From Octopus sinensis (Eukaryota), in assembly GCF_006345805.1 (NCBI RefSeq), contig NC_043001.1, forward strand, positions 133,362,001-133,426,000: a stretch of DNA of 64,000 nucleotides, in the 5' to 3' direction. The notes beneath the pieces are model-generated. The model saw only the letters and a list, made by a program, of their open reading frames with translations. It was not told where the DNA came from and ran no database searches. Positions 6,941 through 61,533 of this stretch are shown one piece after another. The first letter of the stretch is position 1. Each line of letters opens with the position of its first letter. The translations under genes and the position numbers were made by a program.

Positions 6941-6949
6941 GTATATATA

Positions 6950-12720: not shown

Positions 12721-12756
<36 letters not shown>

Positions 12757-12882: not shown

Positions 12883-13320
12883 TGAGGGTCGGCTGAAATG
12901 TTCATAATCTGAGCAAGAAGACACTCTCAATGGAATGTGACCAAATGAAATTCATTTTCTAACACAGTTCCTCTTACTGTCCACATACTTCCATTAGTAG
13001 TTGCAGTGCTTGGGTCGCACTGGTGAAGAAGCTTTTCTGTTGATCAAAATGGTCATCAACAACAGATAAGATGTTCTCATCATAGTGATACTGGTGCTCA
13101 TCTGAGTGTTTTTCTATGTTGGGAAACAGATGATAACCAGAAGGAACCAAATCACTAACATAGGGCGGATGATCAACCAGTTGAAAGCCAGTCACATACA
13201 GCAGCCATTGAAACCAAGGACTTGTGTGCTGAAGCATTGTCCTAATGAAACAAGACCCCATTCATCAGGGGTGTTTGGTCTTGATAGCCTTTCATAACTG
13301 CCTTAGGAAGTTGGTATTTA
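12883..13320 (-). pseudogene. Mariner 3' end with TIR and transposase C-terminal remnant
   Basis: DHPPYVSDLVPSGYHLFP (HPPYSPDLAPSD motif). TA-(T)GAGGG terminus at 12881. Confidence 0.8.
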
Positions 13321-13663
13321 AATTTTCCATTGATGGTGTGATCATTTTGAAGATAGCCAATAAACACAATATTTTGTGCATTAATGCGTAGTTTATATAA
13401 TAATGTGAAGTATATTTTGCATATTAAAATGTTTAATTTTGGAAATGTATCAAATTGCAAATATTTCAAAGTGTGGGACACTACATGACAAAAACTAACA
13501 AAAAAGGAAGAAAATAATGATGCTTGTGTTCCAAAGGTACAATGAGAAGGCCCAGGAGAAGGATAGAGAGATGGGGTAGAGGGAAGGAAGATAGAAGGAA
13601 AGAAAAGAATGAAAAGTGAAAAGATAAACTGGGGATCTGAAATGAGTACTAGGCAGGAAATTG

Positions 13664-13850
13664 GCCCCTGTGCCAGTGGAACGTAAAATAGCACCCACTA
13701 CCCTCTCAGAGTGGTTGGCGTTAGGAAGGGCATCCAGCTGTTGAAACACTGCCAGATCAGACTGGAGTCTGGTGGAGCCTACTGGCTTCCCAGGCCCCAG
13801 TCGAACCATTCAATCTATTCCAGCATGGAAAATGGACATTAAACAATGAT
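13664..13850 (+). mobile_element. RTE 3' end
   Basis: Matches 1555-1646 and 10003-10166. Confidence 0.7.
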
Positions 13851-14375
13851 ATCTTACCTATGCACTGGTCAAGTAGAAAAACGATGAATGATAAAAAATT
13901 GGATTGTCTTTTGGTACCAAAAGAGTGAAGAAAGAGAGTAGAGAAGGTTAGGGAAGAGCAAGTAGGAAGAAAGATAGAGTGCAGAGAAATAAGGGAGTAA
14001 AGATAGACAGTAGGTAGTTGACAGAGATGGACAGAAGAAGAAATGGAAAGCAGTAAAGAGAGAAAAGCAGCAGATAGGTAGAGAGGTAGAGAGATGGGAG
14101 AGGAGATGACAGAGAAATAGATAGAAAAGAGAGACAGTCTTGCACCAAATGTTGAACACTGTGTAGGGTACCACTGAGTGGGAACAGAAGTGAGTGTGTG
14201 ACATTACATTGACAAACAGACCTAAAATACTGCACAGAAAGTCAACACACACACATATAAAAGAATGAAGGAAATTGTAGTATACAGTACTCAGGTGCAC
14301 TACAACTAAAAAGAAAAAATGGCGTGTACTGTTGGCGGACTTCAAGACATGAAAATTTTGAAGGATGTAGTGTAG

Positions 14376-15231
14376 CTTTCGACCGACTTTCCAGGAAGTT
14401 AGGAAAATCTCGGAACTTTTCTGAACGATTTTCCAGGAAGTTGGGGAACCCCCGGAACTTTCCATGAAACCTCGGAACTTTCCGAACGGTTTTCCAGGAA
14501 GCTAGGAAGCCCCCCGGAACTTTCCTGGAAGTTTCCGATCAATTTTCCAGACAGTTGGGGAATCCCCCAGAACTTTCCATGAAATCCTCGGAACTTTCCA
14601 CGAAATCCTCGGAACTTTCCATGAAACCATCGGAACTTTCCATGAAGTTTCCGAGTGGTTTTCCAAGAAGTTGGGGACCCCCCAGAACTTTCCATGAAAT
14701 CCTCGGAACTTTCCATGAAATTTCCTACCGACTTTCCAAGAAGTTTGGAATTCCCGGAACTTTCCATGAAATCCTTGGAATTTCCCAGTAAGTTTCCGAC
14801 CAATTTCCCAGGAAGTTGGGAAATCCCTAGAACTTTCCATGAAATCCTCGGGACTTTCTATGAAGTTTCCGACCAATTTTCCAGAAGTTGGGGAATCCCC
14901 GGAAATTTCCACGAAATCTTCGGAACTTTCCAGGCAGTTTCCGGCCTATTTTCCAAATAGTTTGGAAATCCTCGTAACTGTCCACGAAGTTTCCGATCAA
15001 ATTTACTAGAAGATGAGAAATCCCCGGAACTTTCCACGGAGTTTCCAGGAAGTTGTGGGATCACCTGAACTTTTCCCGAAATCCTCGGAACTTTCCAGGA
15101 AGTTTCCGGTCAATTTTCCAGGACTTTGGGGAATTTCCGGAACTTTCCATGAAATCCTTGGGACTTTCCAGGAAGTTTTCGACCAATTTTTCAGGAAGTT
15201 ATAAAAATCCTCGAAACTTTCGAGGAAGTTC
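14376..15231. repeat. Complex GGAACTTTCC/TTCCAGGAAG minisatellite
   Basis: 21-bp GGAACTTTCCATGAAATCCTC subunits are interleaved with TTCCAGGAAGTTGGGGAATCCCC blocks. Confidence 0.9.
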
Positions 15232-15626
15232 CCTTAAGGAAGTAATGATAGTACTGCAGCCATTCTAGTGCACCGTCTTAATATATTTTCAATTAGGTTT
15301 TGTTGTTGCTTCTTGACTGGAAGGTGGTCTATGCAGCTGTTCTCCTCTGAATGTATCATCCTTGAATGGTTGACTTCTAAGGTATCGTTAAGAGTTCATC
15401 TAATGAGTTTTGGGAGGGTTCTTTTAATGTTTCAGTGGAAGTCTCTTTTATATTTCTTTTTATTTAGATAGGTAGTTGAACAGTTGAGGGAACTCTAAAT
15501 GTCAGATTGTTACAATAGAGTATTTTAGCCCATGATTTCGAAGGTAGAATATTTGCAGGCTTAAAGTATATAAATGTTCGTGCATTAAAACTCTCTCCAG
15601 TGCCGAAGTTTAGAACATGTCCCTCC

Positions 15627-15895
15627 ACAGTTCTATATTTTAGAGATGAGGAATCACATTATTTATATTCGATGGATATTTGTCCTCATCTTGTTTGTTG
15701 TTAACACAACGTTTCGGCTGATATACCCTCCAGCCTTCTTCAGGTGACTTGGGGCAATTTCGAACCTGTGTTCTCATTCCTAATGTATTTTTCGATGTTG
15801 TTATTGTTGTTATTGTTAGTGTTCAGGTCATTGCTTGGAATCGAACTTGGAATCTTGGGTGTAGCCCGCGCTCTTAACCACTACGCCATATGTCC
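15627..15895 (-). mobile_element. tRNA-headed, hammerhead-bearing short element (solo copy)
   Basis: A box TGGCGTAGTGG (15888-15878), B box AGTTCGATTCC (15847-15837), HHR at 15746-15705. Homologous to 22955-23225. Confidence 0.7.
15705..15746 (-). ncRNA. Minimal type I hammerhead ribozyme motif (core intact)
   Basis: CAC-CTGAAGA-A-GGCTG(GAGGGTATAT)CAGCC-GAAA-CG-TT-GTG. Confidence 0.7.
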
Positions 15896-15939
15896 CCCAA
15901 CAATTTTCCATATGAATGTGATAGTATATATTTCTCTTG

Positions 15940-17030
15940 GATGTCAAGAGACTCAGCGCTTTCAGACATTCTCGGTAAATAAGACTTTTAACTGAAGGTA
16001 TTTTACCAGTGAACATTCCTTGTAACCCTTCAATCTCTTCCATGAGACCGGATGAGTTAGAAGATTAAAATTGTAAGCAGTAATATAAACTGCTCAGAAC
16101 TAGGGTTTTCCCTAAAAATAAAACTAACTACCGGTTCCCTTGTCATGAATGTTCGTAGGATGCAGCCTATGAGTTTGCTGCATTTAAAGGTTAGTTTGAT
16201 AATATGGCTGATGGAAAATGTATCATTTGACATGATTACACCTAAGTCCTGTATGTCATTAGTGGTCTGAATCATTATGTTACCTTGTGTCAAATATTGC
16301 GATTTGGGTGAATTCGTTTTTAATGAAGAAGCTGAAATTTTGATGTACTAATTTTCGTATTTTTCTGGTTTAGCTCCTAGCCATCGATATTCTTGTGTAA
16401 TTCATTCCCTGATGTATACGACGTATTACAGGTAACTTGGAGAGAAATCCATTTGCAGTAATTGGTTGACTCCTACTGTATAGGGAATTAAAGAACCATT
16501 CTCCGACTTCTCCTGTGATACCAAGATTTTTTAAATTATGACAGATGATTCCATGATCAGTCTTGTCAAACACCTTAACAATATCAAGGTTTTAACAGTC
16601 AATGATCTTTCCCCTTAAGAGATTATTTGAGGTAGTGTTATGATGCTGTAAGAATTGTGACAGGCAACTTCGTTCAGTCCGAAACCTATACCGAGTGTCA
16701 TCTAAGTTGTTTTCCTCCAGGTATGTTATTACTTTTTGTCTTCGGACAAGGCATTGGATAATTTTATACGTGTAAGACGTGAGGGAAACAGGTCTGTAAT
16801 TTTTAGCTTCAGCACTGCTAACACCTTTGTACCTATATAGGTTTTATTGTAGCTTCTTTCAATAGTCTCGGGAATATGGCAGTATCTGGCGAGTTTTGAA
16901 ATAGTACCTTTAATGATTTCATGAGGTGGTTTTTGCACGTTTTTTAGCAATATAACCGGAATACTATTTGGTACAGATGCTGAGTTTGGGTCTAAATCTT
17001 TAATAGCCGCAAGTATATCAATTTCCATGA
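15940..17030 (-). pseudogene. Old CR1/L2-group LINE RT remnant
   Basis: Fragments FDKTDHGII..LGITG..W..R.Q..NG, DLGVIMSND..HI..K..G.ILRTF and L.YRE.LK.L.L in several frames. Confidence 0.75.
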
Positions 17031-17039
17031 TATTAATTT

Positions 17040-18215
17040 TAAGTTGTGTCTCTGCACTTGAGTTGTGGGATCAAAGAATTCGCTTGGATTATGCACGAGG
17101 CTGCGATACGGATTATACATGGGGCTGCGATACGGACAGTGAATGCGGCCTTCCACCTGTTGAAACGAAAGTGTCGGGGATAGAGTTTGCGGCGCAGGGG
17201 TGAAAGTTTCCGCAAATGGTAGGTTTACATGTCCGTTGAAGATGTTGAAAGTCGGATGAGATTTCCCTGCATCCTCCGTCGTTTGAGTGAAAGCAATGCC
17301 AGCCATTGGAGATGTTCCTCTTATGCAAACTTAGACAAGCCCGCCTCCATTTGTGTGGCCAAGTGCTGAACCCGTTCCAGGTGGTGAATGTCTTTCTGGA
17401 TATATGGGTTTGAGGTATGCATGCAATATTCGAGGATGGGTCGAACTAGAGTGATATATACAGGCCGAAAGACGTCCATTGAAGGGTTGGCAAAGGATCG
17501 GTGGATGAGGAAAAGATTCCTTCTGGCTTTGTTCGCCGCCTCGATACCCTGCCGTGGTAATTTGAAAGTAGTATCGATCCTTATGCTGAGATCCTTTTCT
17601 TCAGTAACCATCTTAAGATGTTGATGTTTGTGGCCAATAGTCAAGGGAGAGTTTGGAGGTGAATCTATTGGCAAATGGCTGCATTTTGAGGCGTTCAAGT
17701 TCAGATTCCATTCTTCTGCCCAATTCGAAGCTCGGTTCAGCGACGATTGGAGTATGTCGTATTGATTCCAAGGTGAGACAAGTTTGACGTCGTCTGCAAA
17801 TAGGAGAACTCTTCCATCAAGAAAATCTGGCAGGTTATTGATATAGAGAAGGAAAAGTATTGGCCCAAGCACCGACCCCTGGGGAACGCCGCTGCATGCA
17901 TTCATCTCCGCGGAGAGATCTCCATTTATCTGCACCCAAAATGTTCGATAGCTAAGGAAGGAAGAAATCCACAAAGTCACCAATGGATGAATCTTGAATG
18001 CTCGAAGTTTGCGCAAGAGAAGTCACTGATTAACGAAGTCAAACGCCTTTGCCAAGTCCAAAAATACCACGCCCACCGAGTCTTTTTCATCCATGGTCCT
18101 TGTAATCCATTCTTCAAGAAGGAGAAGATTTGTTAGGCAAGATCTTCAGGGTAGAAATCCATGCTGCGAGTCGGATATTTCTTTGTACCATATACAGATA
18201 ATTGTATAATGCTTT
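17040..18215 (-). pseudogene. Better-preserved CR1-group LINE RT fragment
   Basis: QHGF..GRSCLTNLL..DLAKAFD, SGVPQGSVLGPILFLLYIN, FADDVKL, LVRPILEY and LERVQ. Confidence 0.9.
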
Positions 18216-18229
18216 GGTTGGAAATAGCT

Positions 18230-18480
18230 GTGGGAATGACCTGAACATTGTGAATAAAAACAAAGTCGAGTATGTTATTTTCCCCTAATTGGACGGGTAA
18301 TGATTTGTTGTATGGGAAAGTCTTTTGTTGTATCGAGAAAAGGGTTCATATCCCTTCACTTCAGTTGCTTAATTCCAGGCTGGATATAATCCTCGGACCA
18401 GCAAAGATTAGTAAGATTAAAGACCCCTGTTAAAAGTATATTAGCTTGTGTGCTGGCCTCAGCTAGGATTAGACTTATGA
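18230..18480 (-). pseudogene. APE endonuclease remnant of a LINE
   Basis: NILLTGVFNLTNLCW (GDFN-like motif) and QIITRPIRG. Confidence 0.45.
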
Positions 18481-18643
18481 GCATAAAATAGCACCTTGAT
18501 CATGATTGTTTATAGTGCTGTGAGTCTCTACTGAACGGCTGGCTGTAGCCTTAAAAAGCAAGTAAAAGTCACATTCGATCACAGCACCAATAACAGTTAA
18601 GCTTCGTGCAATGGCCATACTCGATAACGAGGGGGCAGCCATC

Positions 18644-31950: not shown

Positions 31951-32050
31951 NNNNNNNNNNNNNNNNNNNNNNNNNNNNNNNNNNNNNNNNNNNNNNNNNN
32001 NNNNNNNNNNNNNNNNNNNNNNNNNNNNNNNNNNNNNNNNNNNNNNNNNN
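31951..32050. other. Assembly gap (100 N)
   Basis: N run preceded by (TA)n. Confidence 1.
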
Positions 32051-39619: not shown

Positions 39620-40033
39620 TTATTTCTTCATTGCCCACAAGGGGCTAAACATAGAGGGAACAAACAAGGACAGAGAAACGGATTAAGTCGATTACATCAA
39701 CCCCAGTGCGTAACTGGTACTTAATTTATCGACCCCGAAACGATGAAAGGCAAAGTTGATATCGGCGGAATTTGAACTCAGAACGTAACGGCAGACGAAA
39801 TACCTATTTCTTTACTACCCACAAGGAGCTAGACACAGAGAGGACAAACAAGGACAGACAAACGGATTAAGTCGATTACATCAACTCCAGTGCGTAACTG
39901 GTACTTAATTTATCGACCCCGAGAGGATGAAAGGCAAAGTTGACATCGGCGGAATTTGAACTCAGAACGTAACGGCAGACGAAATACGGCTACGCATTTC
40001 GCCCGGTGTGCTAACGTTTCTGCCAGCTTGCCA
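39620..40033 (-). mobile_element. SINE family D with duplicated body (dimer)
   Basis: Two tandem copies of the body follow one head. Confidence 0.85.
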
Positions 40034-44846: not shown

Positions 44847-45429
44847 GGCGGCGAGCTGGCAGAAACGTTAGCACGCCGGGCGAAATGTGTAGCCGTATTT
44901 CGCGTGCCGTTATGTTCTGAGTTCTAATTCCGCCGAGGTCGACTTTACCTTTCATCCTTTCGGGGTCGATAAATTAAGTACCAGTTACGCACTGGTGTCG
45001 ATGTAATCGATTTAATCCGTTTGTTTGTTCTTGTTTGTCCCCGCTGTGTTTAGCCCCTTGTGGGTAGTAAAGAAATAGGTATTTCGTCTGCCGTTAAGTT
45101 CTGAGTTCAAATTCTGCCAAGGTCGACTTTGCCTTTCATCCTTTCGGGGTCGATAAATTAAGTACCAGTTACGCACTGGGTCGATGTAATCGATTTAATC
45201 CGTTTGTCTGCCCTTGTTTGTCCCCTCTATGTGTAGCCCCTTATGGGTAGTAAAAGAAATAGGTATTTCATCTGTCTTTACTTTCTTAGTTTAAATTCTG
45301 CCGAGGTCGACTTTACCTTTCATCCCTTCGGAGTCGATAAATAAAGTACCAGTTGCCAGCTGGGGTCGATCTAATCAACTGGCCCCCTCCTCAAAAGTTT
45401 CGGGCCTTTTGCCTAGAGTAGAAAAGAAT
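44847..45429 (+). mobile_element. SINE family D trimer, 15-bp TSD
   Basis: Bodies start at 44895, 45079 and 45263 (184-bp period). ATAATAAATGCGAAA at 44832-44846 and 45430-45444. Confidence 0.9.
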
Positions 45430-46929: not shown

Positions 46930-47831
46930 CTAACAACAGATATAGGAATCTAGATGTTCTCTGGTTCAACCAGATTTTCGGTTTGCATATTTCAACCAAG
47001 ATGGCTAGAACATTTTTTGCTGCTTTGGACAAGTGTTTTCCTAAATCTGATCGGCATTATGCTATTTTTAATCGTCACACCGTGAAGGTATCCTAGCTTA
47101 TGTATCGCATAAACAATAGCAAAATGTGGCAAAGGTTCAATAACCAACATACAAACGTTATAATAGTTTGCATAAAACATTGGTCTTGTAAACCAAAATT
47201 AAATATCTCATTTTTATATCTTTTTAAAGGTTACAAGTGAATCGAACATTTGCATCTAAATACCAAGGAGATGTAAACTGCATTGCTAAACACCAACTAC
47301 GACCAATTTGTAGTAGTAGAAATTATTATGATACAGCTAGCACGGTAACAACGCCGATAAATGCAGTCGGGACTGCCTTATATACAAATAAATACGATAA
47401 ATGCTCATGCAGAGAAAAATTAAAATGTCCTTTGATGAATTTCTGTATGAGTACAAATCTTGTATATAAATGTACCGTGCATACAAGAAGGACCCTATGT
47501 TTACATTGGGCAGACGGCTGATTCATTTAAGAATCGTTATCGTAACCATGTTGCCAGCTTTAAGACAATCAATAAGAGACATTCAATATCTTTGGCATAT
47601 TTAGTATGGCGACTGAAGAAGGATAAAATCAAGTACAGTATTAATTCATTCATAGTAAGGTATGCGAAACCACATAATATAATTTCCAGGAGATGCTGTC
47701 TCTGCTCCGAGGAATCCCTGTCTATTCTGTGGACTAACGAGAAGATAATTAATAGAATTTCTGAACGATTCTCGAGATACCTACAGGCATATAAATGTAC
47801 TTTCGCACAATGCAGTGAGAATGAATTTTGA
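46930..47831 (+). pseudogene. Penelope-like linker plus GIY-YIG endonuclease pseudogene
   Basis: WFN..F....T..A..F...LDK.FPK....Y.IFNRHTVKVS, CSCR.K.KCPL..C..LVYK, YIGQT...FKNRY.NH..SF and CCLC.EE. Confidence 0.85.
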
Positions 47832-48934: not shown

Positions 48935-49442
48935 ATATAATATATATATATACTCGTGTTCCAATTAAATTATTATGTATACGTATAACTCTCTATGGTT
49001 TTCTTATGCTAGTGAAATTGTTACATTGTGCTCTAGTAAACACCCGTGGCCTTATTTACACTGTATTTCGTCTAGAATGTTGTTTATTATTATTATTATT
49101 ATTATTATTATTTTAAACACATCTGTTAGATTCTTATGTTACAGTTTCACTGCACATATACACTTGCATACACATTGATATATTTTCATTTTTATTTTCA
49201 TTTTTATTTTTCGTCTTTCTCACCATTATTATTGTTGATATCATTATTTTTCCCATTCACAACTTGGTTTGTAAATTACCCGAATTCCCTTTATTGCCCC
49301 ATCTGTGTTCTCTTGTTGTATTTTACTTTATTTTTATTTTTTTTATCTCATTTTACTTCATCTTATTAAATTTTTTTGATGCCCTTCAAAAGATTCCTCA
49401 CTGATGAGAATGACAATGCATAAATTGAATTTTAAATTTTAT

Positions 49443-49833
49443 ACTCTTTTACTCTTTTACTTGTTTCAGTCATTTGACTGCGGTCATGCTGGAGCACCGC
49501 CTTTAGTCGAGCAAATCGACCCCGGGACTTATTCTTTGTAAGCCCAGTACTTATTCTATCGGTCTCTATTGCCGAACCGCTAAGTTACGGGGACGTAAAC
49601 ACACCAGCATCGGTTGTCAAGCAATGCTAGGGGGACAAACACACACATACACATATATATACATATATACGACAGGCTTCTTTCAGTTTCCGTCTACCAA
49701 ATCCACTCACAAGGCATTGGTCGGCCCGGGGCTATAGCAGAAGACACTTGCCCAAGGTACCACGCAGTGGGACTGAACCCAGAACCATGTGGTTGGTAAG
49801 CAAGCTACTTACCACACAGCCACTCCTGCGCCT
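49443..49833 (-). mobile_element. SINE family A, full length
   Basis: Reverse complement of family A. Confidence 0.9.
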
Positions 49834-50169
49834 ATTTCTATTTTTTATTTTTATTTTAATTTTTTTATTTTCAATTATAATCACTATGATTTAAATTTTT
49901 CTTACATTTTTGCACTGTTTTTCGAAACGTACATATGCATTGAATCCAGTTTTATAATAAATCTATTTCTGTTCCAACATCTTTTCTCCATTTTTTAATA
50001 CTTTTTATGGTATATTCTTATAATTATAATGAATCTCCTCAAATATTATTTTCATATTCTTATTACCAGTTTTGGCTGTTTTTCATGAATATGATGAATC
50101 CTTATTAGAAATCACATTTTCTCTCTTTTTGGATCCCCTAAAAAGTTTGAATTGCTCTTTTTGAACTTT

Positions 50170-50220
<51 letters not shown>

Positions 50221-50221
<1 letters not shown>

Positions 50222-50482
50222 TCTTTTATTTGTTTCAGTCATTTGACTGCGGCCTTGCTGGAGCACCGCCTTTAGTCGAGCAAATCGACCCCAGAACTTA
50301 TTCTTTGTAAGCCTAGTACTTATTCTATCGGTTTCTTTTGTCGAACTTCTAAGCTACGGGGACGTAAACGCACCAGCATCGGTTGTCAAGCAATGTTGGG
50401 GGACAAACACAGACACACTAACACACACACACACGCACACAGACACACACAGATATACTGAAAGAAGCCCGTCGTATATATA

Positions 50483-50515
<33 letters not shown>

Positions 50516-50704
50516 CGCGACGGGTTTCTTTCAGTTTCCGTCTACCAAATCCACTCACAAGGTTTTGGTCAGCCCGAGTCTATAGTAGAAGACACTTGCC
50601 CAAGGTGCCACGCAGTGGGACTGAACCCGGAACCATTGGTAAGCAAGCTACTTACCACACAGCCACTCCTGCGCCTATACTTACCACACAGTCACTCCTG
50701 CGCC
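50221..50704 (-). mobile_element. SINE family A with tandemly duplicated head
   Basis: CTTACCACACAG(C/T)CACTCCTGCGCCTATA occurs twice. Confidence 0.9.
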
Positions 50705-51662
50705 TATATATTCTGAGTAAACATATTTTGATGACTAAAATTCAGCAACACAACATAGAACTAAATAGAATGGTTGTTTTGCAAGAATCAGTAACTGAGA
50801 AAATTATTCCAGAGAATTCAGCCTCTCAGAACCCACAAAGGTAATTATAGAAACTCATTAGGGAGTTTTACTATCACTTTAGTAACTTTAATTACGTTTG
50901 AGATAAAAGCAAATACTTTGCAATGGGATGGGTCACAAACTTCTTTTGTTTTGATACAAAGACGTCAACTTCTATCCTTTGGCATTCTACATGTTTAGAG
51001 AGTGAGATTCTGCACTGATTGCAAGTATTAGAATTAACAGTAACACTACTTTCACTTTTGATGTCTGTTATACTATCAGATGCAATGACTGATTTATTAC
51101 ATAGTATTGAAGTGGTGGATTTGTCTTGTAAATGATAGTCAGGAATAGGAGAGCAGAATTTGATCAGATGGGTTGAAAAGGATTGTTATATATATGAATC
51201 GTAGAGCTTGATGCGATTGGGAAAGATAAATATACTGGATACCTCAACAGGGTGAATCTCTTTCGATTTGTGGGTAAAAGAATTTGTAGAACTCGGGCTT
51301 CACATTTTATTTCCCATCCCATAAAATAGTGAAGAGGGTGAGGTTATGCTTATGTAAGAAGTCTATTTCTTTTTTACTGCAATTTATTTTCTTTCTTGAC
51401 ATTACATCCTAAAAATAAAGAATCTTCAAAAACAGATGCTTTGATTTATTACATCAAGATTAAGACATTTTGCTGGCAAAATTTCCAAAAGAGTATATAC
51501 GTTTGAAGAAAATTCTTGACGTAACAAATCATAATACCATTTCCGGCAATAAATAACTGAACTAAAGCAGCAACTAGGTGATGGTTTGTAAAACTCTGAA
51601 ATGAAAGAAGAACAGAATTCTTTCGTACCAACATCCCAAGTCAACTCAGTACACAATTGTCA
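50221..51662. repeat. Copy 1 of an inverted segmental duplication (partner at 56765-60466)
   Basis: 50221-50825 matches 59854-60466 inverted; 51354-51662 matches 56765-57086 inverted. Confidence 0.85.
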
Positions 51663-51777
51663 AGGTGCGGAACCATGTGGTTGGTAAGCAAGCTAATTAC
51701 CACACAGCCATATATTAGAGAGAAAAATTATCATTTCTAAATCTCTGAACGAGAAATATTCAGTAACAGTACTTTAG

Positions 51778-52048
51778 AGTAAAGATTATTTGCCAACATA
51801 ATGTGACAGTCCTGATTAGGACGAATTATTTAGCCCCAGGAAACATCATCTGCAGTTGTCTATCGACGCACTATCTGCATCCGAATATTTTCGAACAAGG
51901 GAGCGTAGCGCCCCCACTCCCTTGTTCGAAAACATAAGAACGCAGATAGTGCATTGGTAGTCAGCTGGAGACGATGTTTCCTGAGGCTAAATGACAATAG
52001 CATTCGTCCTAATCAGGACTGCCACGTTATGTTGGCAAATAATCTTTA

Positions 52049-52051
<3 letters not shown>
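51778..52051. mobile_element. MITE with about 125-bp imperfect TIRs
   Basis: AGTAAAGATTATTTGCCAACATAA..GAACAAGGGAG / CTCCCTTGTTC..TTATGTTGGCAAATAATCTTTACT. Confidence 0.8.
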
Positions 52052-52126
<75 letters not shown>

Positions 52127-52173
52127 GTTTGTGCGTGTGTGTTAGAGGAAAAATCAAAAGCAATGCTTCTGCT

Positions 52174-52514
52174 TCAAGTCATTTAAAATAATTTAATTGG
52201 AGTAAGGTGAATTTGAAGTCTCACAGCTGTTTCTGGGATAACTCTAATGGTTGGTTAGCATGTCCGTGCACTGGGTATTCCATAATCAGAGACAAGGTGT
52301 GAATATTTTAGACGGGGAAAATTTACAGTTTATAAACTGTGAAATTTATTCCTTGTAAACTGTAAATTTTCCCCGTCTAAAATATTCACACCTTGTCTCT
52401 GATGACGGAATACCCGGTGCACGGATATGCTAACCAACCACTTGGGTTATCCTAGAAACCGCTGTAAGACTTCAAATTTATTTAACCCTAATTAAACTAT
52501 ACTAAATGACTTGA
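52174..52514. mobile_element. Foldback (about 160-bp arms, 17-bp spacer) of an HHR-bearing Penelope-type repeat
   Basis: Arms at 52174-52335 and 52353-52514; each holds an HHR motif. Confidence 0.8.
52395..52470 (+). ncRNA. Type I hammerhead motif (core intact, GUA triplet)
   Basis: GTCT-CTGATGA-[GGAATACCC..GGGTTATCC]-GAAAC-CGCT-GTA-AGAC. The mirror copy at 52218-52293 has CTGATTA and GTG. Confidence 0.6.
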
Positions 52515-52555
52515 AATACTCGTTCCGCCTTGGTTTTGATTTTTCCTCTAATAGG

Positions 52556-52938
52556 GGAAGCACTCCGTCGGTTACGACGACGAGGGTTCCGGTTGATCCG
52601 ATCAACAGAACAACCTGCTCGTGAAATTAACGTGTAAGTGGCTGAGCACTCCACAGACACGTGTACCCTTAACGTAGTTCTCGGGGATATTCAGCGTGAC
52701 ACAGAGAGTGACAAGGCCGGCCCTTTGAAATACAGGTACAACAGAAACAGGAAGTAAGGGTGAGAGAAAGTTGTGGTGAAAGAGTACAGCAGGGATCACC
52801 ACCACCCCCTGCCGGAGCCTCGTGGAGCTTTTAGGTGTTTTCGCTCAATAAACACTCACAAAGCCCTGGTCTGGGAATCAAAACCGCAATCCTACAACCG
52901 CGAATCCGCTAACCTAACCACTGGGCCATTGCGCCACC
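52556..52938 (-). mobile_element. SINE family B, full length, 12-bp TSD
   Basis: TTTCCTCTAATA at 52542-52553 and 52942-52953. Confidence 0.9.
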
Positions 52939-53155
52939 ACGTTTCCTCTAATATAGATATATACATGCTATAACGGAACCCTAACACGGATCCCTAGATC
53001 CAGCCTTAGCTGTGACCTTGGAACTTAATAGTCGACCAACTATAGCACTTACTTAGCGTACCTATTCGTTTAGATCAAAGAAAAGTAATTAAAGTGATAA
53101 TTAAAATTTCAGATCATTTCGTGACTTTTGGCCCACACTGTATATAACCAGATAG

Positions 53156-53538
53156 GGAGGCACAATGGCCCAGTGGTTAGGGCAGCGGACTCGCGGTCGT
53201 AGGATCGTGGTTTCGATTCCCAGACCGGGCGTTGTGAGTGTTTATTGAGCGAAAACACCTAAAGCTCCACGAGGCTCCGGCAGGGGATGGTGGTGATCCC
53301 TGCTGTACTCTTTCACCACAACTTTCTCTCACTCCTACTTCCTGTTTCTGTTGTACCTGTATTTCAACGGGCCGGCCTTGTCACTCTCTGTGTCACGCTG
53401 AATATCCCCGAGAACTACGTTAATGGTGCACGTGTCTGTGGAGTGCTCAGCCACTTACACGTTAATTTCACGAGCAGGCTGTTCCGTTGATTCGGATCAA
53501 CCGGAACCCTCGTCGTCGTAACCGACGGAGTGCTTCCA
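53156..53538 (+). mobile_element. SINE family B, full length
   Basis: tRNA head TGGCCCAGTGG / GGTTTCGATTCC. Near-identical to the other B copies. Confidence 0.9.
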
Positions 53539-53584
53539 TATAATCAGATACCTTTTAGGAATCATAGTCTCCATAAAACATATA

Positions 53585-53855
53585 TTCTTTTATTCGTTTA
53601 TTTACTCCAGTCATCTGACCGTGGCCAGGCTGGAACACCGCCTTGAAGGGTTTTAGATGAACAACTCGATCTCAGGATTTATTTTTGTTAAAGCCTAGTA
53701 CTTATTATGTTTTTGTCGAACCGCTGTGTTACGGAGACTTAAACACACCAGCATCGGCTGCCAAGCAGTGATGGGGAGACAAACACAGACACACGCACAC
53801 ATACATATATACATGCATATATACATACATATATATAATATATATATATATATAT

Positions 53856-53924
<69 letters not shown>

Positions 53925-54171
53925 GTGAGGGAAGAAATGGAACTGAACGAAGATTTTACAAAATTCCTTTTTATTATTTTCTACATATGTTTCAAAGGCT
54001 TTTCTACATATATTTATAAATATATAAAACTTCAATTATCCGCACTAAGGCACGGTTGCGATACCCCATGGTCGTAACCTCAACCGTGATTTTTCTGTTG
54101 TGATTTTTGCTACCCAGGTATCGGTTATAATTTGAATAATCCGTAACAAGATAATTCATTTATCCATTTCA

Positions 54172-54202
<31 letters not shown>

Positions 54203-54375
54203 CGCACAAACACGCGCGCGATGAGATTCTTTCAATTTCTGTCTGCCAAATCCACTCACGAGGCTTTGGTCGGCCCGTGGCTATAGTAAAAGACACTCGC
54301 CCAAGGTGCCACGCAGTGGGATTGAACCCAATGCCATGTTGTTTGGAAGCAAACTTCTTACCACACAGCCAAGCA
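53585..54375 (-). mobile_element. SINE family A split by (TA)n and an AT-rich insert
   Basis: Tail half at 53585-53800 and head half at 54225-54375. Confidence 0.65.
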
Positions 54376-54629
54376 CACATTATTTATATAACAGTTTTAG
54401 AATTTCTCCTCGTGACATATCCTATCTTTTAGGCCTTCTTAAAGGACCAAAAATAGGCAAATTCAAGCCCTTAAATTCCCACAGAATGTTAGCACACATC
54501 TCATATGTATTAAGGTAAATTAAAATTTTTTTAGTCGGCGTTGTGAAGCTTCGAATAAATGTAGATAATTGCTGTATTGTTAGTATTTCCGTAGATAGAA
54601 AGATTAGCTTGACCTGGTTTCAAATCTTT

Positions 54630-55503
54630 TCCTGGTATTGCAAAACTTCCGGGACAAGCCTAAAATATTACGCCAATACTTCAAAAAATAATGTTTTCTA
54701 TGTATTAGTTATATTCGAGCACCATCCTCTCCGAAATAGTCCCCTTTCGGAAAGTATGCAACGATCCTAACACGTCGTCTTCAAACCTCAAAAGTAACAT
54801 AGAAATCGTCTTTATGTAGGCCATTCAACAACTCCAGTGATTCCATTTAAATTTCATCTACCGTCTCGAATCGGTGACCCTTCAGTTTTTATTGTATTTC
54901 AGACAACTCAAAGAAGTGACGAGGGGATAGATCATGCGAATACAGAGGTATTTTGTGACGATCACAAGAATGCGGTGGTAGTTCAGGTTTCTTGTGAGAA
55001 TCTCCTTGTAAATTCCATAACTGATTCCAGTTACCGAAGAGGGTTTATAGATTGTTTGACAGCGATCCTCATTGATGAGTTAACGATTTTTTTCACTTTT
55101 TTTTTTATCAGTGTTTCGATAGTGACTGGTCACCTTGAATGCCCGTCATCTTAATCCAGCATTCAATCAGTCTTGACACGCATGTTCCACTCAAAAACCT
55201 GTATTTAACCTTACGAATGCTGCTAATACCCGAAAGAATTATTCTAATGGTCTCTGGAGCCAATTTTTCAAGCTTTATGCAAAATTCAATGACGGCACAT
55301 TACTCGAAATTGTTGGTCTTTGTGAAGAGAGCCGAGCTGTGCTAACACGACATTGCAAAACCTCTGTGAATAATTGGACATGTGTAGATAACATGAAACT
55401 TATTTGCTGACTGACACAGAAAGCTATCACAGATCGCACACATTTCAATTAAATAGTTAAATCACAAAATGTGCAGTCTGGAAATATTCTGATAACAACT
55501 CGA
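54630..55503 (-). pseudogene. Internally deleted mariner element
   Basis: Minus-strand fragments IEFC.KLEK, INEDR..GISYG..EIL and DLSP..F..KLKGHRFETV..DRC..GDYF. Confidence 0.7.
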
Positions 55504-55547
55504 AATTTCCCAACGTCGCATCAATACAAGTTTAAAATTATATTATA

Positions 55548-56060
55548 CTAGCAGTATCGCCCGGCGTTGCTCGGGTTTGTAAGGGAAATAACTATATAAG
55601 CATTTTTAGAGAGTTACTTCCCTTATAGATGCCAATTTGGGCTTTCTTAGCCATTTCTGTTTTGGTGTCTTCAAGCCATGAAGTCGTTGTTCTAAAAGAA
55701 CGCTGGTCTCCTTGACAACGCTTTACAACGTTGATTTCCTTACACTCCTTTCCCCACAGCTTCACGAGGGAGGGAAGAAGGGGGAGAAGCAAACAGGTGC
55801 AGGTGTGACCATGGACGCCAACTCCGCCGCCATCGACACACGAAAAATTATGCATTAAAATGGAATAAAAAATTATGTTAAATTATTTTTAAAATCGTAG
55901 ACTCATCGTAGACGCGCGCTAATAGCCAGAAGGGCTCGATATGAATCACGACTATAAGATACCCGAATTTGGTTAAACTGCATCGCAAAATGTGGGAGTA
56001 GTTAGGAATCTAAATCGAAGGAGACAGACACTCACACAACTACAGTTTTATATATATAGA
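55548..56060 (-). mobile_element. Non-autonomous Helitron H1, long variant
   Basis: Same termini as H1; extra segment shared with 28042-28678. Confidence 0.85.
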
Positions 56061-57086
56061 TATAAATGCTTCTTAATGCTGTGATCGCTTCATTAACTAT
56101 CTTTCAATCAAAACTAATAAATTTTGAAATCCCACCAACTTTTTTGTCGAGGTGGGTTTACATTCACTATGAAACGCTTGAATCCCCAAAATCTTCTAAA
56201 TAAACCAGAAAAGGAGGGAAAATGTCAAAGCCATGTATTTCTATGTAATTCTTTTCCAGGTATACGGCTTGAAATTTGAAATTGATTATAGAAATTTTCT
56301 CATAAGAAGAAACTTAGTAAAAGAAAGGTATCTGAAATTAAACTTTGAATTTGAACCAACATTCAATAAAAACTAATTTGCAATCTCTTCCAGCTTAAAA
56401 ATTGGATGGACATTTTTTTTTCTTTCGGTTCGAGTTTTTATTTAAATTGCAGGCGTCGATTTGATTTCCTCCTTGAATTCTGTGAATAAAAACTTCCTAG
56501 TTTTACTGATTTTAAATTTCCTGTGTAAAAAATATTTGGAATAGCAATTTTTTTTTAGATATTTAACTGGAATTCAAAGATTTCAATGAGTTTGTTACTT
56601 TGATATGCAACCGTTCCATTTCATTTAGCTGTAAAGCACATAAATATAGAATAATTAAGTTAAAGGTCGATATACTGAAAATCGTACGCAAATTTTGGAA
56701 ACAGATGAAGGTATCTATTAAGATAAAATCATCTGTGAAATTCTCATCATCGAACGGTTTCCGCTGACAATTGTGTACTGAGTTGACTTGGGATGTTGGC
56801 ATGAAAGAATTCTGTTCTTTCATTTCAGGGTTTAAAACTTACTAAGTTTTACAAACCATCACCTAGTTGCTGCTTTAGTTCAGTTATTTATTGCCGGAAA
56901 TGGCATTATTTGTTACGTCAAGAATTTTCTTCAAACGTATATACTCTTTTGGAAATTTTGCCTGCAAAATGTCTTAATCTTGATATAATAAAATCAAAGC
57001 ATCTGTTTTTGAAGATTCCTTATTTTTAGGATATAATGTCAAAATTCCAAAGACGAAAGAAAATAAATTGCAGTAAAAACTCTTAC

Positions 57087-59633
57087 GGTATTCCTTTTTG
57101 ATCTCTTTCGACACCCTCTTTGATCTCTTTCGGCACTCTCTTTGATCTCTTTCGGCAGTCTCTTTTATCTCTTTCGGGAATCCAATTTGATATCTTTCGG
57201 CACTCTTTGATCTCTATCGGTACTCCTCTTTGATCTCTTTCGGCACTCTCTTTGTTCTCTTTCGGCACCCTCTTTGATCCCTTTCGGCACACTCTTTGAT
57301 CTCTTTCGGCACGTCCTTTGATCTCTTTCGGGACCCCCTTTGATCTCTTTCGGGACACCCTTTGATCTCTTTCGGCACGTCCTTTGATCTCTTTCGGCAC
57401 CCTCTTTGATCTCTTTCGGGACCCCTTTTGATCACTTTCGGCACGTCCTTTGATCTCTTTCGGTACTCCTCTTTGATCTCTTTCGGGACACTCTTTGATC
57501 TATTTCGGCACGTCCTTTGATCTTTTCGGGACCCCCTTTTGATCTCTTTCGGCACGTCCTTTGATCTTTTTCGGTACTCCTCTTTGATCTCTTTCGGCAC
57601 CCTCTTTGATCTCTTTCGGGACCCCTTTTGATCTCTTTCGGCACGTCCTTTGATCTCTTTCGGTACTCCTCTTTGATCTCTTTCGGCACCCTCTTTGATC
57701 TCTTTCGGCACGCCCTTTGATCTATTTCGGCACGTCTTTGATCTCTTTCGGTACTCCTCTTTGATCTCTTTCGGCACCCTCTTTGATCTCTTTCGGCACG
57801 TCCTTTGATCCCTTTCGGTACTCCTCTTTGATCTCTTTCGGCACCCTCTTTGATCTCTTTCGGCACGTCCTTTGATCTCTTTCGGTACTCCTCTTTGATC
57901 TCTTTCGGCACGTCCTTTGATCTCTTTCGGCAAGCCCTTTGATCTCTTTCGGCACGTCCTTTGATCTTTTTCGGTACTCATCTTTGATCTTTTTCGGCAC
58001 CCTCTTTGATCTCTTTCGGCACGTCATTTGATCTCTTTCGGCACCCTCTTTGATCTCTTTCGGCACGTCCTTTGATCTCTTTCGGTACTCCTCTTTGATC
58101 TCTTTCGGCACCCTCTTTGATCTCTTTCGGCACGTCCTTTGATCTCTTTCGGTACTCCTCTTTGATCTCTTTCGGCACCCTCTTTGATCTCTTTCGGCAC
58201 GTCCTTTGATCTCTTTCGGTACTCCTCTTTGATCTCTTTCGGCACCCTCTTTGATCTCTTTCGGCACGTCCTTTGATCTCTTTCAGTACACCTCTTTGAT
58301 CTCTTTCGGCACCCTCTTTGATCTCTTTCGGCACCCCCTTTGATCTCTTTCGGCACGTCCTTTCATCTCTTTCGGTACGTCCTTTGATCTCTTTCGGCAC
58401 CCTCTTTAATCTCTTTCGGCACGCCCTTTGATCTCTTTCCGCACGTCCTTTGATCTCTTTCGGTACTCCTCCTTGATCTCTTTCGGCACCATCCTTGATC
58501 TCTTTCGGCACGCCCTTTGATCTCTTTCGGCACGTCCTTTGATCTCTTTCGGTACTCCTCTTTGATCTCTTTCGGCACCCTCTTTGATCTCTTTCGGCAC
58601 GTCCTTTGATCTCTTTCGGTACTCCTCTTTGATCTCTTTCGGCACCCTCTTTGATCTCTTTCGGCACGTCCTTTGATCTCTTTCGGTACGTCCTTTGATC
58701 TCTTTCGGTACTCCTCTTTGATCTCTTTCGGCACCCTCTTTAATCTCTTTCGGCACGCCCTTTGTTCTCTCTCGGTACTCCTCTTTGATCTCTTTCGGCA
58801 CCCTCTTTGATCTCTTTCGGCACGTCCTTTGATCTCTTTCGGTACTCCTCTTTGATCTCTTTCGGCACCTTCTTTGATCTCTTTCGGGACCCCCTTTGAT
58901 CTCTTTCGGCACGCCCTTTGAACTATTTCGGCACGTCTTTGATCTCTTTCGGTACTCCTCTTTGATCTCTTTCGGCACCCTCTTTGATCTCTCTCGGTAC
59001 TCCTCTTTGATCTCTTTCGGCACCCTCTTTGATCTCTTTCGGCACGTCCTTTGATCTCTTTCGGTACTCCTCTTTGATCTCTTTCGGCACCCTCTTTGAT
59101 CTATTTCGGCACGTCCTTTGATCTCTTTCAGCAAGCCCTTTGATCTCTTTCGGCACGTCATTTGATCTTTTTCGGTACTCCTCTTTGATCTTTTTCGGCA
59201 CCCTCTTTGATCTCTTTCGGCACGTCCTTTGATCTCTTTCGGCACCTCCTTTGATCTCTTTCGGCACGTCCTTTGATCTCTTTCGGGATGCCCTTTGATC
59301 TCTTTCGGCACGTCCTTTGATCTCTTTCGGCACGGCCTTTGATCTCTTTCGGTACTCCTCTTTGATCTCTTTCGGGACCCCCTTTGATCTCTTTCGGCAC
59401 GTTCTTTGATCTCTTTCGGTACTCCTATTTGATCTCTTTCGGCACCCTCTTTGATCTTTTTCGGGACCCCCTTTGATCTCTTTCGGCACGTCCTTTGATC
59501 TCTTTCGGCACGTCCTTTGATCTCTTTCGGGACCCTCTTTAATCTCTTTCAGCACTCTCTTTGATCTCTATCGGGATTCCATTTTGATCTCTTTCGGGAC
59601 TACCTTTTGATCTCTTTCGGCACCCCCCTTTGA
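57087..59633. repeat. Minisatellite: TTTGATCTCTTTCGG plus a 7-8 nt variable spacer (about 22-23 bp unit)
   Basis: Visible directly. Spacers CACGTCC, TACTCCTC, CACCCTC and GACCCCC. Confidence 0.95.
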
Positions 59634-59778
59634 TAGGGTTAGGTGTTAGGGGTTAGGGTTAGGGTTAGGGTTTAGCTTTAGGGTTTAGGGTTAGGTTTAA
59701 AGTTAGGGTTAGGGTTGGGGTTAGGGCTAGGATTAGGGGTTAGGGTTAGTGTTAGGGGTTAGGGGTTAGGGGTTAGGT

Positions 59779-59813
<35 letters not shown>

Positions 59814-59854
59814 GTTTAGGGTTAGAGTGTTAGGGTTAGGGGTAGGGGTAGGGG
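59634..59854 (+). repeat. Interstitial telomeric (TTAGGG)n tract with variant units
   Basis: Visible directly; about 220 bp. Confidence 0.95.
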
Positions 59855-59982
59855 AGGCTGAATTCTCTCGAATAATTTTCTCAGTTACTGATTCTTGCAA
59901 AACAACCATTCTATTTAGTTCTATGTTGTGTTGCTGAATTTTAGTCATCAAAATAAGTTTGCTCAGAATATATAGGTGCAGA

Positions 59983-60166
59983 AGTGACTGTATGGTAAGT
60001 ATAGTCGCCGGAGTGGCTATGTGGTAAGTATCTTGCTTACCAAACACATGGTTCCGGGTTCAGTCCCACTGCGTGGCACCTTAGGCAAGTGTCTTCTACT
60101 ATAGCCTCGGGCCGACCGAAGCCTTGTGAGTGAATTTGGTAGACGAAAACTGAAAGAGGCCTATCG

Positions 60167-60206
<40 letters not shown>

Positions 60207-60466
60207 CTCGTGTGTGTGTGTGTGAGTGAGTGTGTGTGTGTGTGCATGTGTGTGTGTGTCTGTGTTTGTGTGTCTGTGTTTGTCCCCCCAACATCGCTTG
60301 ACAACCGATGCTGGTGTGTTTACGTCCCCGTCACTTAGCGGTTCGGCAAGAGAAACCGATAGTTAAGTACTAGTCTTACAAAGAATAAGTCCTGGGGTCG
60401 ATTTGCTCGACTGAAGGCGGTGCTCCAGCATGACCGCAATCAAATGACTGAAACAAATTAAAAGAA
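59983..60466 (+). mobile_element. SINE family A with duplicated head (duplicate of 50221-50704)
   Basis: Same double head and shared diagnostic variants. Confidence 0.9.
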
Positions 60467-61533
60467 TTGATATATATATTCATATAATATTCATATAATA
60501 CACATATATATATATATGTAAATTATATATACATACATACATACATACATACATACACATATACATACATACATACATACGTTTGGTGTCTATAAGGCAT
60601 ATTAGCAGTTGATATTGTATATATGTGTACACACATATATGTATATATGTGTGTGTGTAGTATGTATGTATATTTATGAAAGTGTTAACCTCTTTAAACC
60701 ACTTTAAACAACAACAACAACAACACTCCTTTAACCCAGACTCGTCCCTAACATAATTTGTACTTCCAGAACTGTGTATCTACTACGTCGTATTTTAGTT
60801 TGTTTCCCATGATACAGTCAACTTCTTGTAAAAAAATACTTTTTACTTATTTTGTCCTTGGGTTGGGGCGTTGATTACGACTCTGTAGTATCGGAATTTG
60901 TATAACCTCTAATCTTTTGGTCCATGAACCAAAAAAAAATTTCCTTTGCGTTCTGTTATGTGGAAATCTTTCTCATTCTCAATTGAAAACCACAATATTC
61001 ACCCATTTCCTTTTTTTTTTTTTCATCCGGAATCTCTTTCCGCCTTACCTCAGTCAGCAATGACCTTCAGAGGTAAGTTGTAGCATCAAGTACATTTTAT
61101 GAATGAAGACATAGACTATACATGCATCAGACCATTATACGGGTCAGTCCAGGTCAGTCCAGTAACTTCAACTTAGTTTAATGGGAAAGAGAGAAAGAGT
61201 TTAGAGAGAGACCGTGAGAGCACTATTGAAACATATCGCTGACTCGCTCTTCTACAGGAAGTTTGATCAACTTTCATATTGGCTGAACACATTGATTTTG
61301 TTTAACCCATTTCGTCCTGGTTGTCAGCAGTATTATTGAATGGACGCCATAGCATTGCATTTGCGAGACATGAGGGAATAATTCCAATCACTTCTTTATA
61401 AACACATATTTTTACATCTCTGTTGTTACAAAGTGGTTGTAATTGTAACTCTCTAATAAATAATTTGTCTATTTGCAAAACTGTAACACGCAATCGGCTT
61501 TCGTCTAGGACATTTTTATTTTTTAATTTACAT

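What the first reader, a model, noticed from the sequence alone, without database searches (positions are those of the whole stretch)
50221..60466. Inverted segmental duplication whose middle is replaced by a satellite-telomere fusion
Seen: 51354-51662 matches 56765-57086 and 50221-50825 matches 59854-60466, both inverted and colinear, including a SINE with the same duplicated head. The 528 bp between the arms in copy 1 (50826-51353) corresponds in copy 2 to 2767 bp made of a 22-bp satellite plus (TTAGGG)n. The right junction has short GAGG microhomology. Inference: a subtelomere-plus-telomere block was captured during break repair or healing of a fold-back rearrangement, or a mobile satellite-telomere cassette exists.
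Basis: partly seen in the sequence, partly recalled or inferred. Interest (0 to 1): 0.75.

Follow-up and report, generated by a model that had tools for sequence, protein, structure and literature searches.

The report
Satellite-plus-telomere insert in inverted duplicate
A 1.5-kb stretch of octopus DNA sits twice, in opposite directions and 5 kb apart, and in one copy the middle 528 bases are replaced by 2.8 kb of satellite repeat followed by telomere repeat, most likely a scar of DNA break repair with no evident function.

Summary
Arm A (50208-50825) matches 59854-60479 and arm B (51354-51675) matches 56752-57086. Both pairs are inverted and colinear, and both copies of A hold a SINE with the same 29-bp head duplication. 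Between the arms, copy 1 has 528 bp found nowhere else in the window. Copy 2 has 2767 bp: a 22-bp satellite with a 67-bp higher-order unit, then 220 bp of degenerate TTAGGG. The G-rich strand runs away from the satellite, as at a chromosome end.

The diverged arms argue against a recent assembly duplication. The inverted homology stops at the outer edges of the arms, so a fold-back with terminal healing is not supported. I found no transposon hallmarks.

My best reading (0.55): a small local inverted duplication in which a ready-made satellite-plus-telomere block replaced the middle during break repair. The left junction has an imperfect 7-bp microhomology (CTCTTAC). The right junction shares at most 1-2 bp.

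Three things could not be tested: whether the satellite is subtelomeric, whether the arms recur elsewhere in the genome, and which copy is ancestral. No octopus genome could be searched by DNA.

One result is unexplained: the SINE part of the arms is about four times more diverged than the unique parts.

Telomere-repeat insertions with deletions and inverted duplications are already known in vertebrates, so I rate interest as moderate to low.

The parts
50208..50703 (-). SINE a, part of arm A in copy 1. It is full length, with the tail and (TA)n at the left and the head at the right. The 29-bp head duplication lies at 50649-50708.
50704..50825 (.). Unique part of arm A in copy 1. It differs from its partner at 3 of 121 sites.
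50826..51353 (.). M1, the 528-bp middle of copy 1. It is absent from copy 2 and has no other match in the window.
51354..51675 (.). Arm B in copy 1. It has 7 substitutions against 6 indel events relative to its partner. The last 9 nt (GCGGAACC-) already belong to a SINE head fragment.
51668..51710 (-). Head-only SINE fragment that continues beyond the homology boundary, in copy 1 only.
51676..56751 (.). 5.1-kb spacer between the copies. It has no inverted homology of its own apart from SINE and MITE-like repeats.
56752..57086 (.). Arm B' (copy 2, inverted). It includes a 16-bp quasi-palindromic insertion at 56829-56844.
57087..59634 (+). 22-bp satellite, about 114 units. The core is TTTGATCTCTTTCGGCAC. 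It has a three-monomer higher-order unit of 67 bp in the centre and degenerate edges. The last unit is cut after TTTGA.
59634..59853 (+). Degenerate (TTAGGG)n tract of 220 bp. The G strand is on the + strand, reading away from the satellite and toward A'.
59854..59974 (.). Unique part of arm A' (copy 2, inverted).
59975..60479 (+). SINE a' with the same head duplication (59971-60031) and a tail microsatellite.

Best explanation
This is a neutral structural scar, not a functional element.

Shown: a unit of about 1.47 kb (SINE, 122 bp unique, 528 bp, 322 bp unique) lies twice in inverted orientation, 5.1 kb apart. In one copy a 2767-bp block has replaced the 528-bp middle. The block is a mature higher-order satellite that passes mid-monomer into about 35 degenerate TTAGGG units. 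Its polarity is that of a chromosome end.

Inferred:
- The block existed already joined somewhere else, either at a chromosome end or at another satellite/ITS locus.
- It was put in during repair of a break or a collapsed fork in or at copy 2.
- The mechanism was either low-processivity repair synthesis that switched templates at short microhomologies (MMBIR/FoSTeS type) or end-joining that captured a free fragment while the 528 bp were lost.
- Duplication and replacement may have been one complex event or two events.
For: - Colinear inverted arms with a paralogous site lacking the block.
- The arms are diverged: 2.5% in the unique parts, 8-10% in the SINE, plus indels. This is not a near-identical assembly duplicate, and the region lies in one contig of at least 32 kb.
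- Block polarity is satellite then G-strand TTAGGG on the same strand, with a single orientation. TTAGGG is the only experimentally determined cephalopod telomere motif (PMC13218726, PMC6160780).
- The satellite is a mature array, with a 67-bp higher-order unit up to 96% self-identical in the centre and degenerate edges. It was not freshly expanded from local sequence.
- Microhomology is seen at three boundaries:
  - B'/satellite: CTCTTAC against CTCTTTC.
  - Inner boundary: GCGGAA(A)CC.
  - Outer boundary: in (TA)n.
- Arm B is indel-rich and carries a snap-back type 16-bp inverted insertion, as error-prone repair synthesis would leave.
- No TIR, TSD or hairpin at the unit ends or block flanks.
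- Vertebrate ITS insertions at breaks show the same accompaniments: deletion, filler sequence and inverted duplication (PMC7215372, PMC2246262).
Against: - The donor was not found. Whether the satellite is subtelomeric could not be tested.
- Polarity (which copy is derived) is not established.
- The right junction shares only 1-2 nt.
- The arms do not have one age. The SINE part is about 4 times more diverged than the unique parts (Fisher p = 2e-6). A single event plus uniform decay does not predict this.
- The copy number of the arms outside this window is unknown. The only other octopus DNA examined, 20.7 kb (L001), lacks them.
Confidence: 0.55

Rival explanations
1. Two separate steps. A satellite array first came to lie in copy 2. 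Later a break at its right edge was repaired with telomerase adding TTAGGG to the exposed 3' end before rejoining to A'. This would be the short-ITS pathway described in mammals.
For: The telomeric tract starts mid-monomer (TTTGA|TAGGGTT), as de novo addition to a broken satellite would give. The tract is short, 220 bp. The pathway is documented, with deletions and rearrangements at the site (PMC7215372, PMC2246262, PMC8537989). The tract has 6% substitutions relative to a perfect repeat. That is not clearly older than the SINE-based divergence of 4-5% per lineage.
Against: It needs an extra unexplained event to bring a 2.5-kb mature higher-order satellite to exactly the place where M1 is missing. 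Only 1 nt is in register with the hexamer at the satellite 3' end. The tract is degenerate along its whole length, with 13 substitutions and 13 indel positions.
Confidence: 0.15
2. The arms are the flanks of a dispersed repeat or non-autonomous transposon whose central module varies. One variant would carry tandem repeats plus a microsatellite-like tract, as in mollusc Helentron-derived HINE elements. Under this reading the two copies are separate insertions.
For: Read on the minus strand, the order is simple repeat, then tandem array, then flank, which resembles HINE architecture (PMC7492417). Young unique parts (2.5%) lying next to an older SINE (8-10%) with a sharp switch near 50725 would fit a young element beside older DNA.
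Against: There is no subTIR, palindrome, TSD or TIR at the ends. Both copies abut the same SINE with the same private 29-bp head duplication and the identical junction. Independent insertions would not reproduce that. There are only two copies, 5 kb apart and inverted, and none in L001. HINE monomers are 100-500 bp and the microsatellites have 3-8-nt motifs unrelated to the telomere (PMC7492417).
Confidence: 0.12
3. RNA-templated insertion. A TERRA-like transcript, with satellite sequence ending in UUAGGG repeats, was reverse-transcribed into the break.
For: The block has the polarity and layout of such a transcript, with subtelomeric sequence 5' and a roughly 200-nt G-strand repeat 3'. Active LINE and SINE machinery is evident in the window. 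Retrotranscribed telomerase RNA is known at ITS sites (PMC8537989).
Against: There is no poly(A) or LINE-type tail and no target-site duplication. There is no evidence that the satellite is transcribed or subtelomeric.
Confidence: 0.05
4. Fold-back (inverted-duplication/deletion) chromosome end healed by telomere capture and later re-fused to A'.
For: Reading rightward from copy 1, the order is unit, 5-kb spacer, short inverted B', satellite, then telomere. This looks like a healed inverted-duplication end.
Against: A' continues the same inverted unit right after the telomeric tract. Inverted homology then stops at 60479, and the flanks on both sides are unrelated. The duplication is therefore a small bounded segment, not a chromosome-arm fold-back.
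Confidence: 0.04
5. Assembly artefact: a chimeric join through the satellite, or retained haplotype sequence.
For: The assembly is scaffolded, with a 100-N gap at 31951-32050. Satellites and ITS are error-prone to assemble.
Against: The gap is 18 kb away. The arms differ by 2.5-10% plus indels, unlike fold-back read artefacts. A chimeric join would not by chance resume the same inverted unit at the colinear position.
Confidence: 0.05

Closest known systems
Interstitial telomeric sequences inserted at double-strand breaks (primates, rodents, horse; PMC7215372, PMC2246262, PMC8537989)
   Same: A TTAGGG tract at an internal site, with a comparable site lacking it. Insertion is accompanied by deletion, extra sequence and, in the horse, inverted duplications of flanking sequence. 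Junction microhomology is short.
   Different: Here the tract does not abut both flanks. Its 5' side is a 2.5-kb satellite, so telomerase acting on the locus's own broken end is not sufficient. The tract is degenerate. The 'empty site' is a paralogue, not an orthologue.
Subtelomeric and fusion ITS classes (PMC6410037)
   Same: Degenerate TTAGGG-like repeats next to a tandem repeat, as in subtelomeric ITS. It would be a relic of a chromosome end at an internal position.
   Different: There is no head-to-head pair of arrays, so it is not a fusion ITS. Neither the position of this locus on its chromosome nor the location of the satellite is known.
Replicative template-switch rearrangements (FoSTeS/MMBIR; Hastings et al. 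2009, Carvalho et al. 2011; cited from my own knowledge, not read here)
   Same: A nearby inverted duplicated segment, an inserted stretch of foreign sequence, microhomology at breakpoints, and small templated indels in the copied DNA.
   Different: The donor of the insert is not identified. The event is old (2.5-10% divergence), so the mechanism can only be inferred.
Helentron-derived HINE elements carrying satellite-like arrays in oysters (PMC7492417)
   Same: A mollusc, with a tandem array next to a short simple repeat between two conserved flanks.
   Different: No subTIRs or 3' palindrome were found. The monomer is 22 bp rather than 100-500 bp. The simple repeat is the telomere motif. The flanks include a whole SINE shared with a non-repeat-bearing copy.

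Membership tests
Short ITS inserted at a DSB (telomerase-mediated) | TTAGGG tract at an internal site, absent from a comparable empty site | tested here: met
   The tract lies at 59634-59853. The paralogous copy 1 has no tract.
Short ITS inserted at a DSB (telomerase-mediated) | [quoted passage not shown] | tested here: not met
   The 5' neighbour is a 2.5-kb satellite, not arm B'. Only 1 nt is in register at TTTGA|TAGGG.
Fusion ITS | Head-to-head (TTAGGG)n-(CCCTAA)n arrays | tested here: not met
   All 25 matches in the tract are on the + strand.
Subtelomere-plus-telomere block relocated internally | Degenerate telomeric repeats with the G strand reading away from the adjacent repeat | tested here: met
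Subtelomere-plus-telomere block relocated internally | The adjacent repeat is found next to terminal telomere arrays elsewhere in the genome | not testable with these tools
   No octopus genome could be searched by DNA. The satellite ORF has no protein-database homologue. The JGI metagenome collection lacks even the SINE, so its negative result is uninformative.
Fold-back inverted duplication with terminal healing | Inverted homology continues outward from the fold-back point | tested here: not met
   Homology ends at 50208 / 60479 and at 51675 / 56752.
MMBIR/FoSTeS-type complex rearrangement | Microhomology at breakpoints | tested here: inconclusive
   The microhomologies are CTCTTAC (6 of 7), GCGGAA(A)CC (8-9 nt with one indel), (TA)n, and only 1-2 nt at telomere/A'. 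They are suggestive but short.
MMBIR/FoSTeS-type complex rearrangement | Inserted segment is a copy of an identifiable template elsewhere | not testable with these tools
HINE / Helentron non-autonomous element | 5' subTIR with complementary IR, and 3' subTIR followed by a palindrome | tested here: not met
   No inverted or direct terminal repeats beyond chance (shuffle p 0.8-0.9). No stems of 8 bp or more in A-unique or B.
HINE / Helentron non-autonomous element | Many dispersed copies with the same flank-array association | not testable with these tools
   There are two copies in 64 kb and none in the 20.7 kb of O. vulgaris L001. This sample is far too small.

The most novel reading that the evidence does not exclude
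The satellite-plus-TTAGGG unit is not a one-off capture. It would be a recurrent inserting entity in octopus genomes, either a TERRA-like transcript reverse-transcribed into breaks or a mobile cassette. In that case telomere-end sequence would be repeatedly seeded inside chromosomes.
Probability: 0.1. Interest if true: 0.7.

Novelty: new member of a known kind. Interest (0 to 1): 0.35.

Why it matters
The locus carries its own control. A paralogous copy shows what the site looks like without the block, so both junctions of an internal telomere-repeat insertion can be read to the base.

I found no sequence-level description of an interstitial telomeric site or of this satellite in cephalopods. 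If the satellite proves to be subtelomeric, the locus would document relocation of a chromosome-end block into a chromosome arm in an octopus, and it would give a probe for octopus chromosome ends.

Otherwise it is an ordinary neutral rearrangement in repeat-rich, non-coding DNA.

Tried and rejected
1. Reaching other satellite arrays through the open reading frames of the satellite's minus strand. There were no homologues, and the ORF is not on record.

2. Reaching other copies of arm B through its 76-aa ORF. No candidate was found.

3. Exact-pattern scans of JGI metagenome contigs for the satellite dimer and, as a calibration, for the SINE core. Both gave zero hits, so the collection holds no octopus DNA and the negative result says nothing.

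4. Finding the window's own record and coordinates through 13 window ORFs. None is on record.

5. Sampling octopus DNA through an O. vulgaris reverse-transcriptase paralogue. This yielded one 20.7-kb locus that shares repeat families with the window but holds neither arms nor satellite.

6. In-situ birth of the satellite from M1.
   - M1 shares a 10-mer with the monomer, but on the non-colinear strand; 2% of random slices share one.
   - M1 shares a colinear 9-mer, AAGAGGGTG, near the B boundary.
   - The rest of M1 is absent from copy 2, so in-situ expansion is unlikely. The 9-mer may instead be junction homeology.

7. M1 as a spliced-out intron or a transposon insertion. It has no GT..AG boundaries on the relevant strand and no TSD.

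8. A structured RNA in arm B. Folding z-scores were -0.25 and -1.55. There were no Rfam or tRNA hits.

9. Dating the block as older than the duplication from its degeneracy. I rejected this as not robust, because the arms themselves show two very different divergence levels.
Full report
**What is there**

Self-comparison of the window confirms two inverted, colinear matches.
- Arm A: 50208-50825 against 60479-59854 (87% with gaps over 628 columns).
- Arm B: 51371-51662 against 57079-56765 (87% with gaps, E = 5e-113; ungapped pieces 96-98%).

Global alignment places the start of B at GTAAGA (51354 / 57086). It also shows that, after a 4-nt gap, homology continues for 9 nt (GCGGAA(A)CC) to 51675 / 56752.

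Arm A consists of a complete SINE, in reverse orientation on the + strand, plus 122 bp of sequence that has no other copy in the window. Arm B and the 528-bp middle of copy 1 (M1, 50826-51353) are likewise unique.

The two SINE copies share four things:
- a 29-bp duplication of the head;
- the identical junction to the unique DNA;
- several diagnostic bases not seen in the other roughly 12 SINE copies of the window;
- the head-duplication junction, which occurs only twice in 64 kb.

The SINE therefore belonged to the unit before it was duplicated.

**The block**

Between B' and A' lie 2767 bp (57087-59853).

The satellite (57093-59634):
- It has about 114 units of 22 bp. The 18-bp core TTTGATCTCTTTCGGCAC is found 113 times against 0.02 expected, and nowhere else in the window.
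- The apparently variable 4-5-nt linker is monomer-type specific. The centre of the array is a three-monomer higher-order unit: GGCAC-CCTC, GGCAC-GTCC, GGTAC-TCCTC, together 67 bp.
- Self-identity at lag 67 reaches 96% in the centre. Both edges are degenerate. This is a mature satellite, not a fresh local expansion.

The telomeric tract:
- The last monomer is cut after TTTGA and is followed directly by TAGGGTTAGG.
- The tract (59634-59853) is 88% identical to perfect (TTAGGG)n, with 13 substitutions and 13 indel positions. All units are on the + strand.
- The G strand therefore reads away from the satellite, which is the polarity of a chromosome end.

TTAGGG is the only experimentally determined telomere motif in cephalopods (PMC13218726; PMC6160780).

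On taxon: the window's reverse-transcriptase fragment has its best match (87%) in an Octopus vulgaris protein. The O. vulgaris locus that encodes that protein shares LINE, MITE and SINE families with the window. This supports an octopod origin.

**Junctions**

- Left junction: ...AAAAACTCTTAC|GGTATTCCTTTTTGATCTC. CTCTTAC can be read either as the start of B (copy 1 has CTTCTTAC) or as satellite (CTCTTTCGGTAC TCCTC). This is an imperfect 6-7-nt microhomology.
- Right junction: ...GGGGTAGGGG|AGGCTGAATTC.
- Inner boundary: it lies in GCGGAA(A)CC. In copy 1 this runs on into a head-only SINE fragment (51668-51710). In copy 2 it runs into unrelated DNA.
- Outer boundary: it lies in the (TA)n of the SINE tail.

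**What it is not**

- *Not a fold-back with terminal healing.* The inverted homology is a bounded 1.47-kb unit, and sensitive searches find nothing beyond either end.
- *Not a recognisable transposon.* There are no terminal inverted repeats, no target-site duplications and no hairpins at the unit ends or block flanks.
- *Not a fusion ITS.* The tract has a single orientation.
- *Unlikely to be an assembly artefact.* The only gap (100 N) is at 31951-32050. The arms differ by 2.5-10% plus indels. A chimeric join would not resume the same inverted unit at the colinear point.
- *No sign of function.* There are no Rfam or tRNA hits and no unusual RNA folding in B. The long ORFs on the satellite's minus strand come from a stop-free monomer and have no homologues.

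**Most likely history**

Shown: a local inverted duplication, in one copy of which 528 bp are replaced by a satellite-plus-telomere block.

Inferred: the block pre-existed as a joined unit and entered during repair of a break or collapsed fork. The route was either template switching at microhomologies (MMBIR/FoSTeS type) or capture of a fragment by end-joining with loss of M1'.

Three observations support an error-prone replicative process:
- the microhomologies at the junctions;
- the unusual indel load of B (6 events against 7 substitutions);
- a 16-bp insertion in B' (56829-56844) that is an inverted copy of the adjacent 56846-56858, a snap-back signature.

The closest documented phenomenon is the insertion of telomeric repeats at break sites in mammals. 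In those cases deletion is the commonest accompaniment, and complex cases include inverted duplications of the flanks (PMC7215372; also PMC2246262, PMC8537989).

This locus differs in that the tract's 5' neighbour is a 2.5-kb satellite. Telomerase acting on the locus's own broken end does not suffice, unless the satellite had arrived earlier. That two-step version is the main rival (0.15).

**Unexplained**

The arms do not have one age.
- The SINE part differs at 42 of 394 aligned sites outside its microsatellite. Only 10 of these are CpG transitions.
- A-unique plus B differ at 10 of 407 sites.
- Fisher p = 2e-6, or 9e-5 without the CpG transitions. The switch is sharp, near 50725.
- The two SINE copies are as far from each other as from the unrelated SINE at 49442-49842.

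Two readings are possible. An old duplication (about 9%) could have been followed by later copying from the paralogue of the stretches that flank the block. In that case the 2.5% layer dates the repair event, and the block was already degenerate when it arrived. Alternatively, the SINE is hypermutable or exchanges sequence with other SINEs. Because of this ambiguity I do not use the degeneracy of the telomeric tract to date the block.

**Limits**

No octopus genome could be searched by DNA with the tools available. Every indirect route failed or was uninformative. Four points are therefore untested:
- the chromosomal location of the satellite;
- the genome-wide copy number of the arms;
- the position of this window on its chromosome;
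- the polarity of the change.

**Verdict**

The break-repair capture reading is the best supported (0.55). The fold-back reading is rejected. The mobile-cassette reading is unsupported but not excluded. The locus is a new member of a known kind of event and, as far as I could find, has not been described in cephalopods. Interest is moderate to low.

Noticed in passing
50222-50825 and 51354-51675 against their partners: Divergence between the duplicated arms changes sharply. It is about 9-10% in the SINE part and about 2.5% in the adjacent unique parts (Fisher p = 2e-6). CpG decay does not explain the difference.
   Followed up: partly
56829-56858: A 16-bp insertion in arm B' (56829-56844) is an inverted copy of the neighbouring 56846-56858, which makes a quasi-palindrome absent from copy 1. 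Overall, arm B has 6 indel events against 7 substitutions.
   Followed up: partly
51332-51340 and 57112-57120: The end of M1 carries AAGAGGGTG. This is the reverse complement of the satellite's CACCCTCTT, in colinear orientation close to the B boundary (13 nt away against 25 nt). It may be junction homeology or chance (rough p about 0.003).
   Followed up: partly
31951-32050: A run of 100 N, an assembly gap flanked by (TA)n. The finding lies 18 kb away, in the next contig.
   Followed up: yes
2364-2387: A second, tiny telomere-like stretch (AAGGTTAGGGTTAGGGTTACG, about 2.5 units).
   Followed up: no
52601-52831 / 53261-53491; 52173-52335 / 52353-52515; 51828-51903 / 51917-51992: Three long inverted-repeat pairs (97%, 88% and 83% complementary) lie inside the spacer between the two copies. 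They look like foldback or MITE-type elements. One family is also present in O. vulgaris locus L001.
   Followed up: no
12756-18496; L001 9406-15690: About 6 kb is colinear, at 85-88%, with O. vulgaris OX597821.1 near 91.26 Mb. The stretch includes a LINE reverse-transcriptase fragment (17321-18016, RVT_1 E = 2e-16) and 73/145-bp tandem repeats (14405-15200). It is probably one large repeat family.
   Followed up: partly
47460-47831 and 6805-7449: ORFs with a weak GIY-YIG-like motif (Pfam E = 0.0095, below the cut-off). They may be remnants of Penelope-like or other GIY-YIG-bearing elements.
   Followed up: partly
39621-39987 and 44895-45376: Two arrays of a 184-bp tandem repeat (2.0 and 2.6 copies, 89-92% matches), on opposite strands.
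   Followed up: no
57083-59555, minus strand: The satellite monomer has no stop codon in any frame on the minus strand. This gives overlapping ORFs of up to 301 aa. They have no homologues and are an artefact of the repeat.
   Followed up: yes
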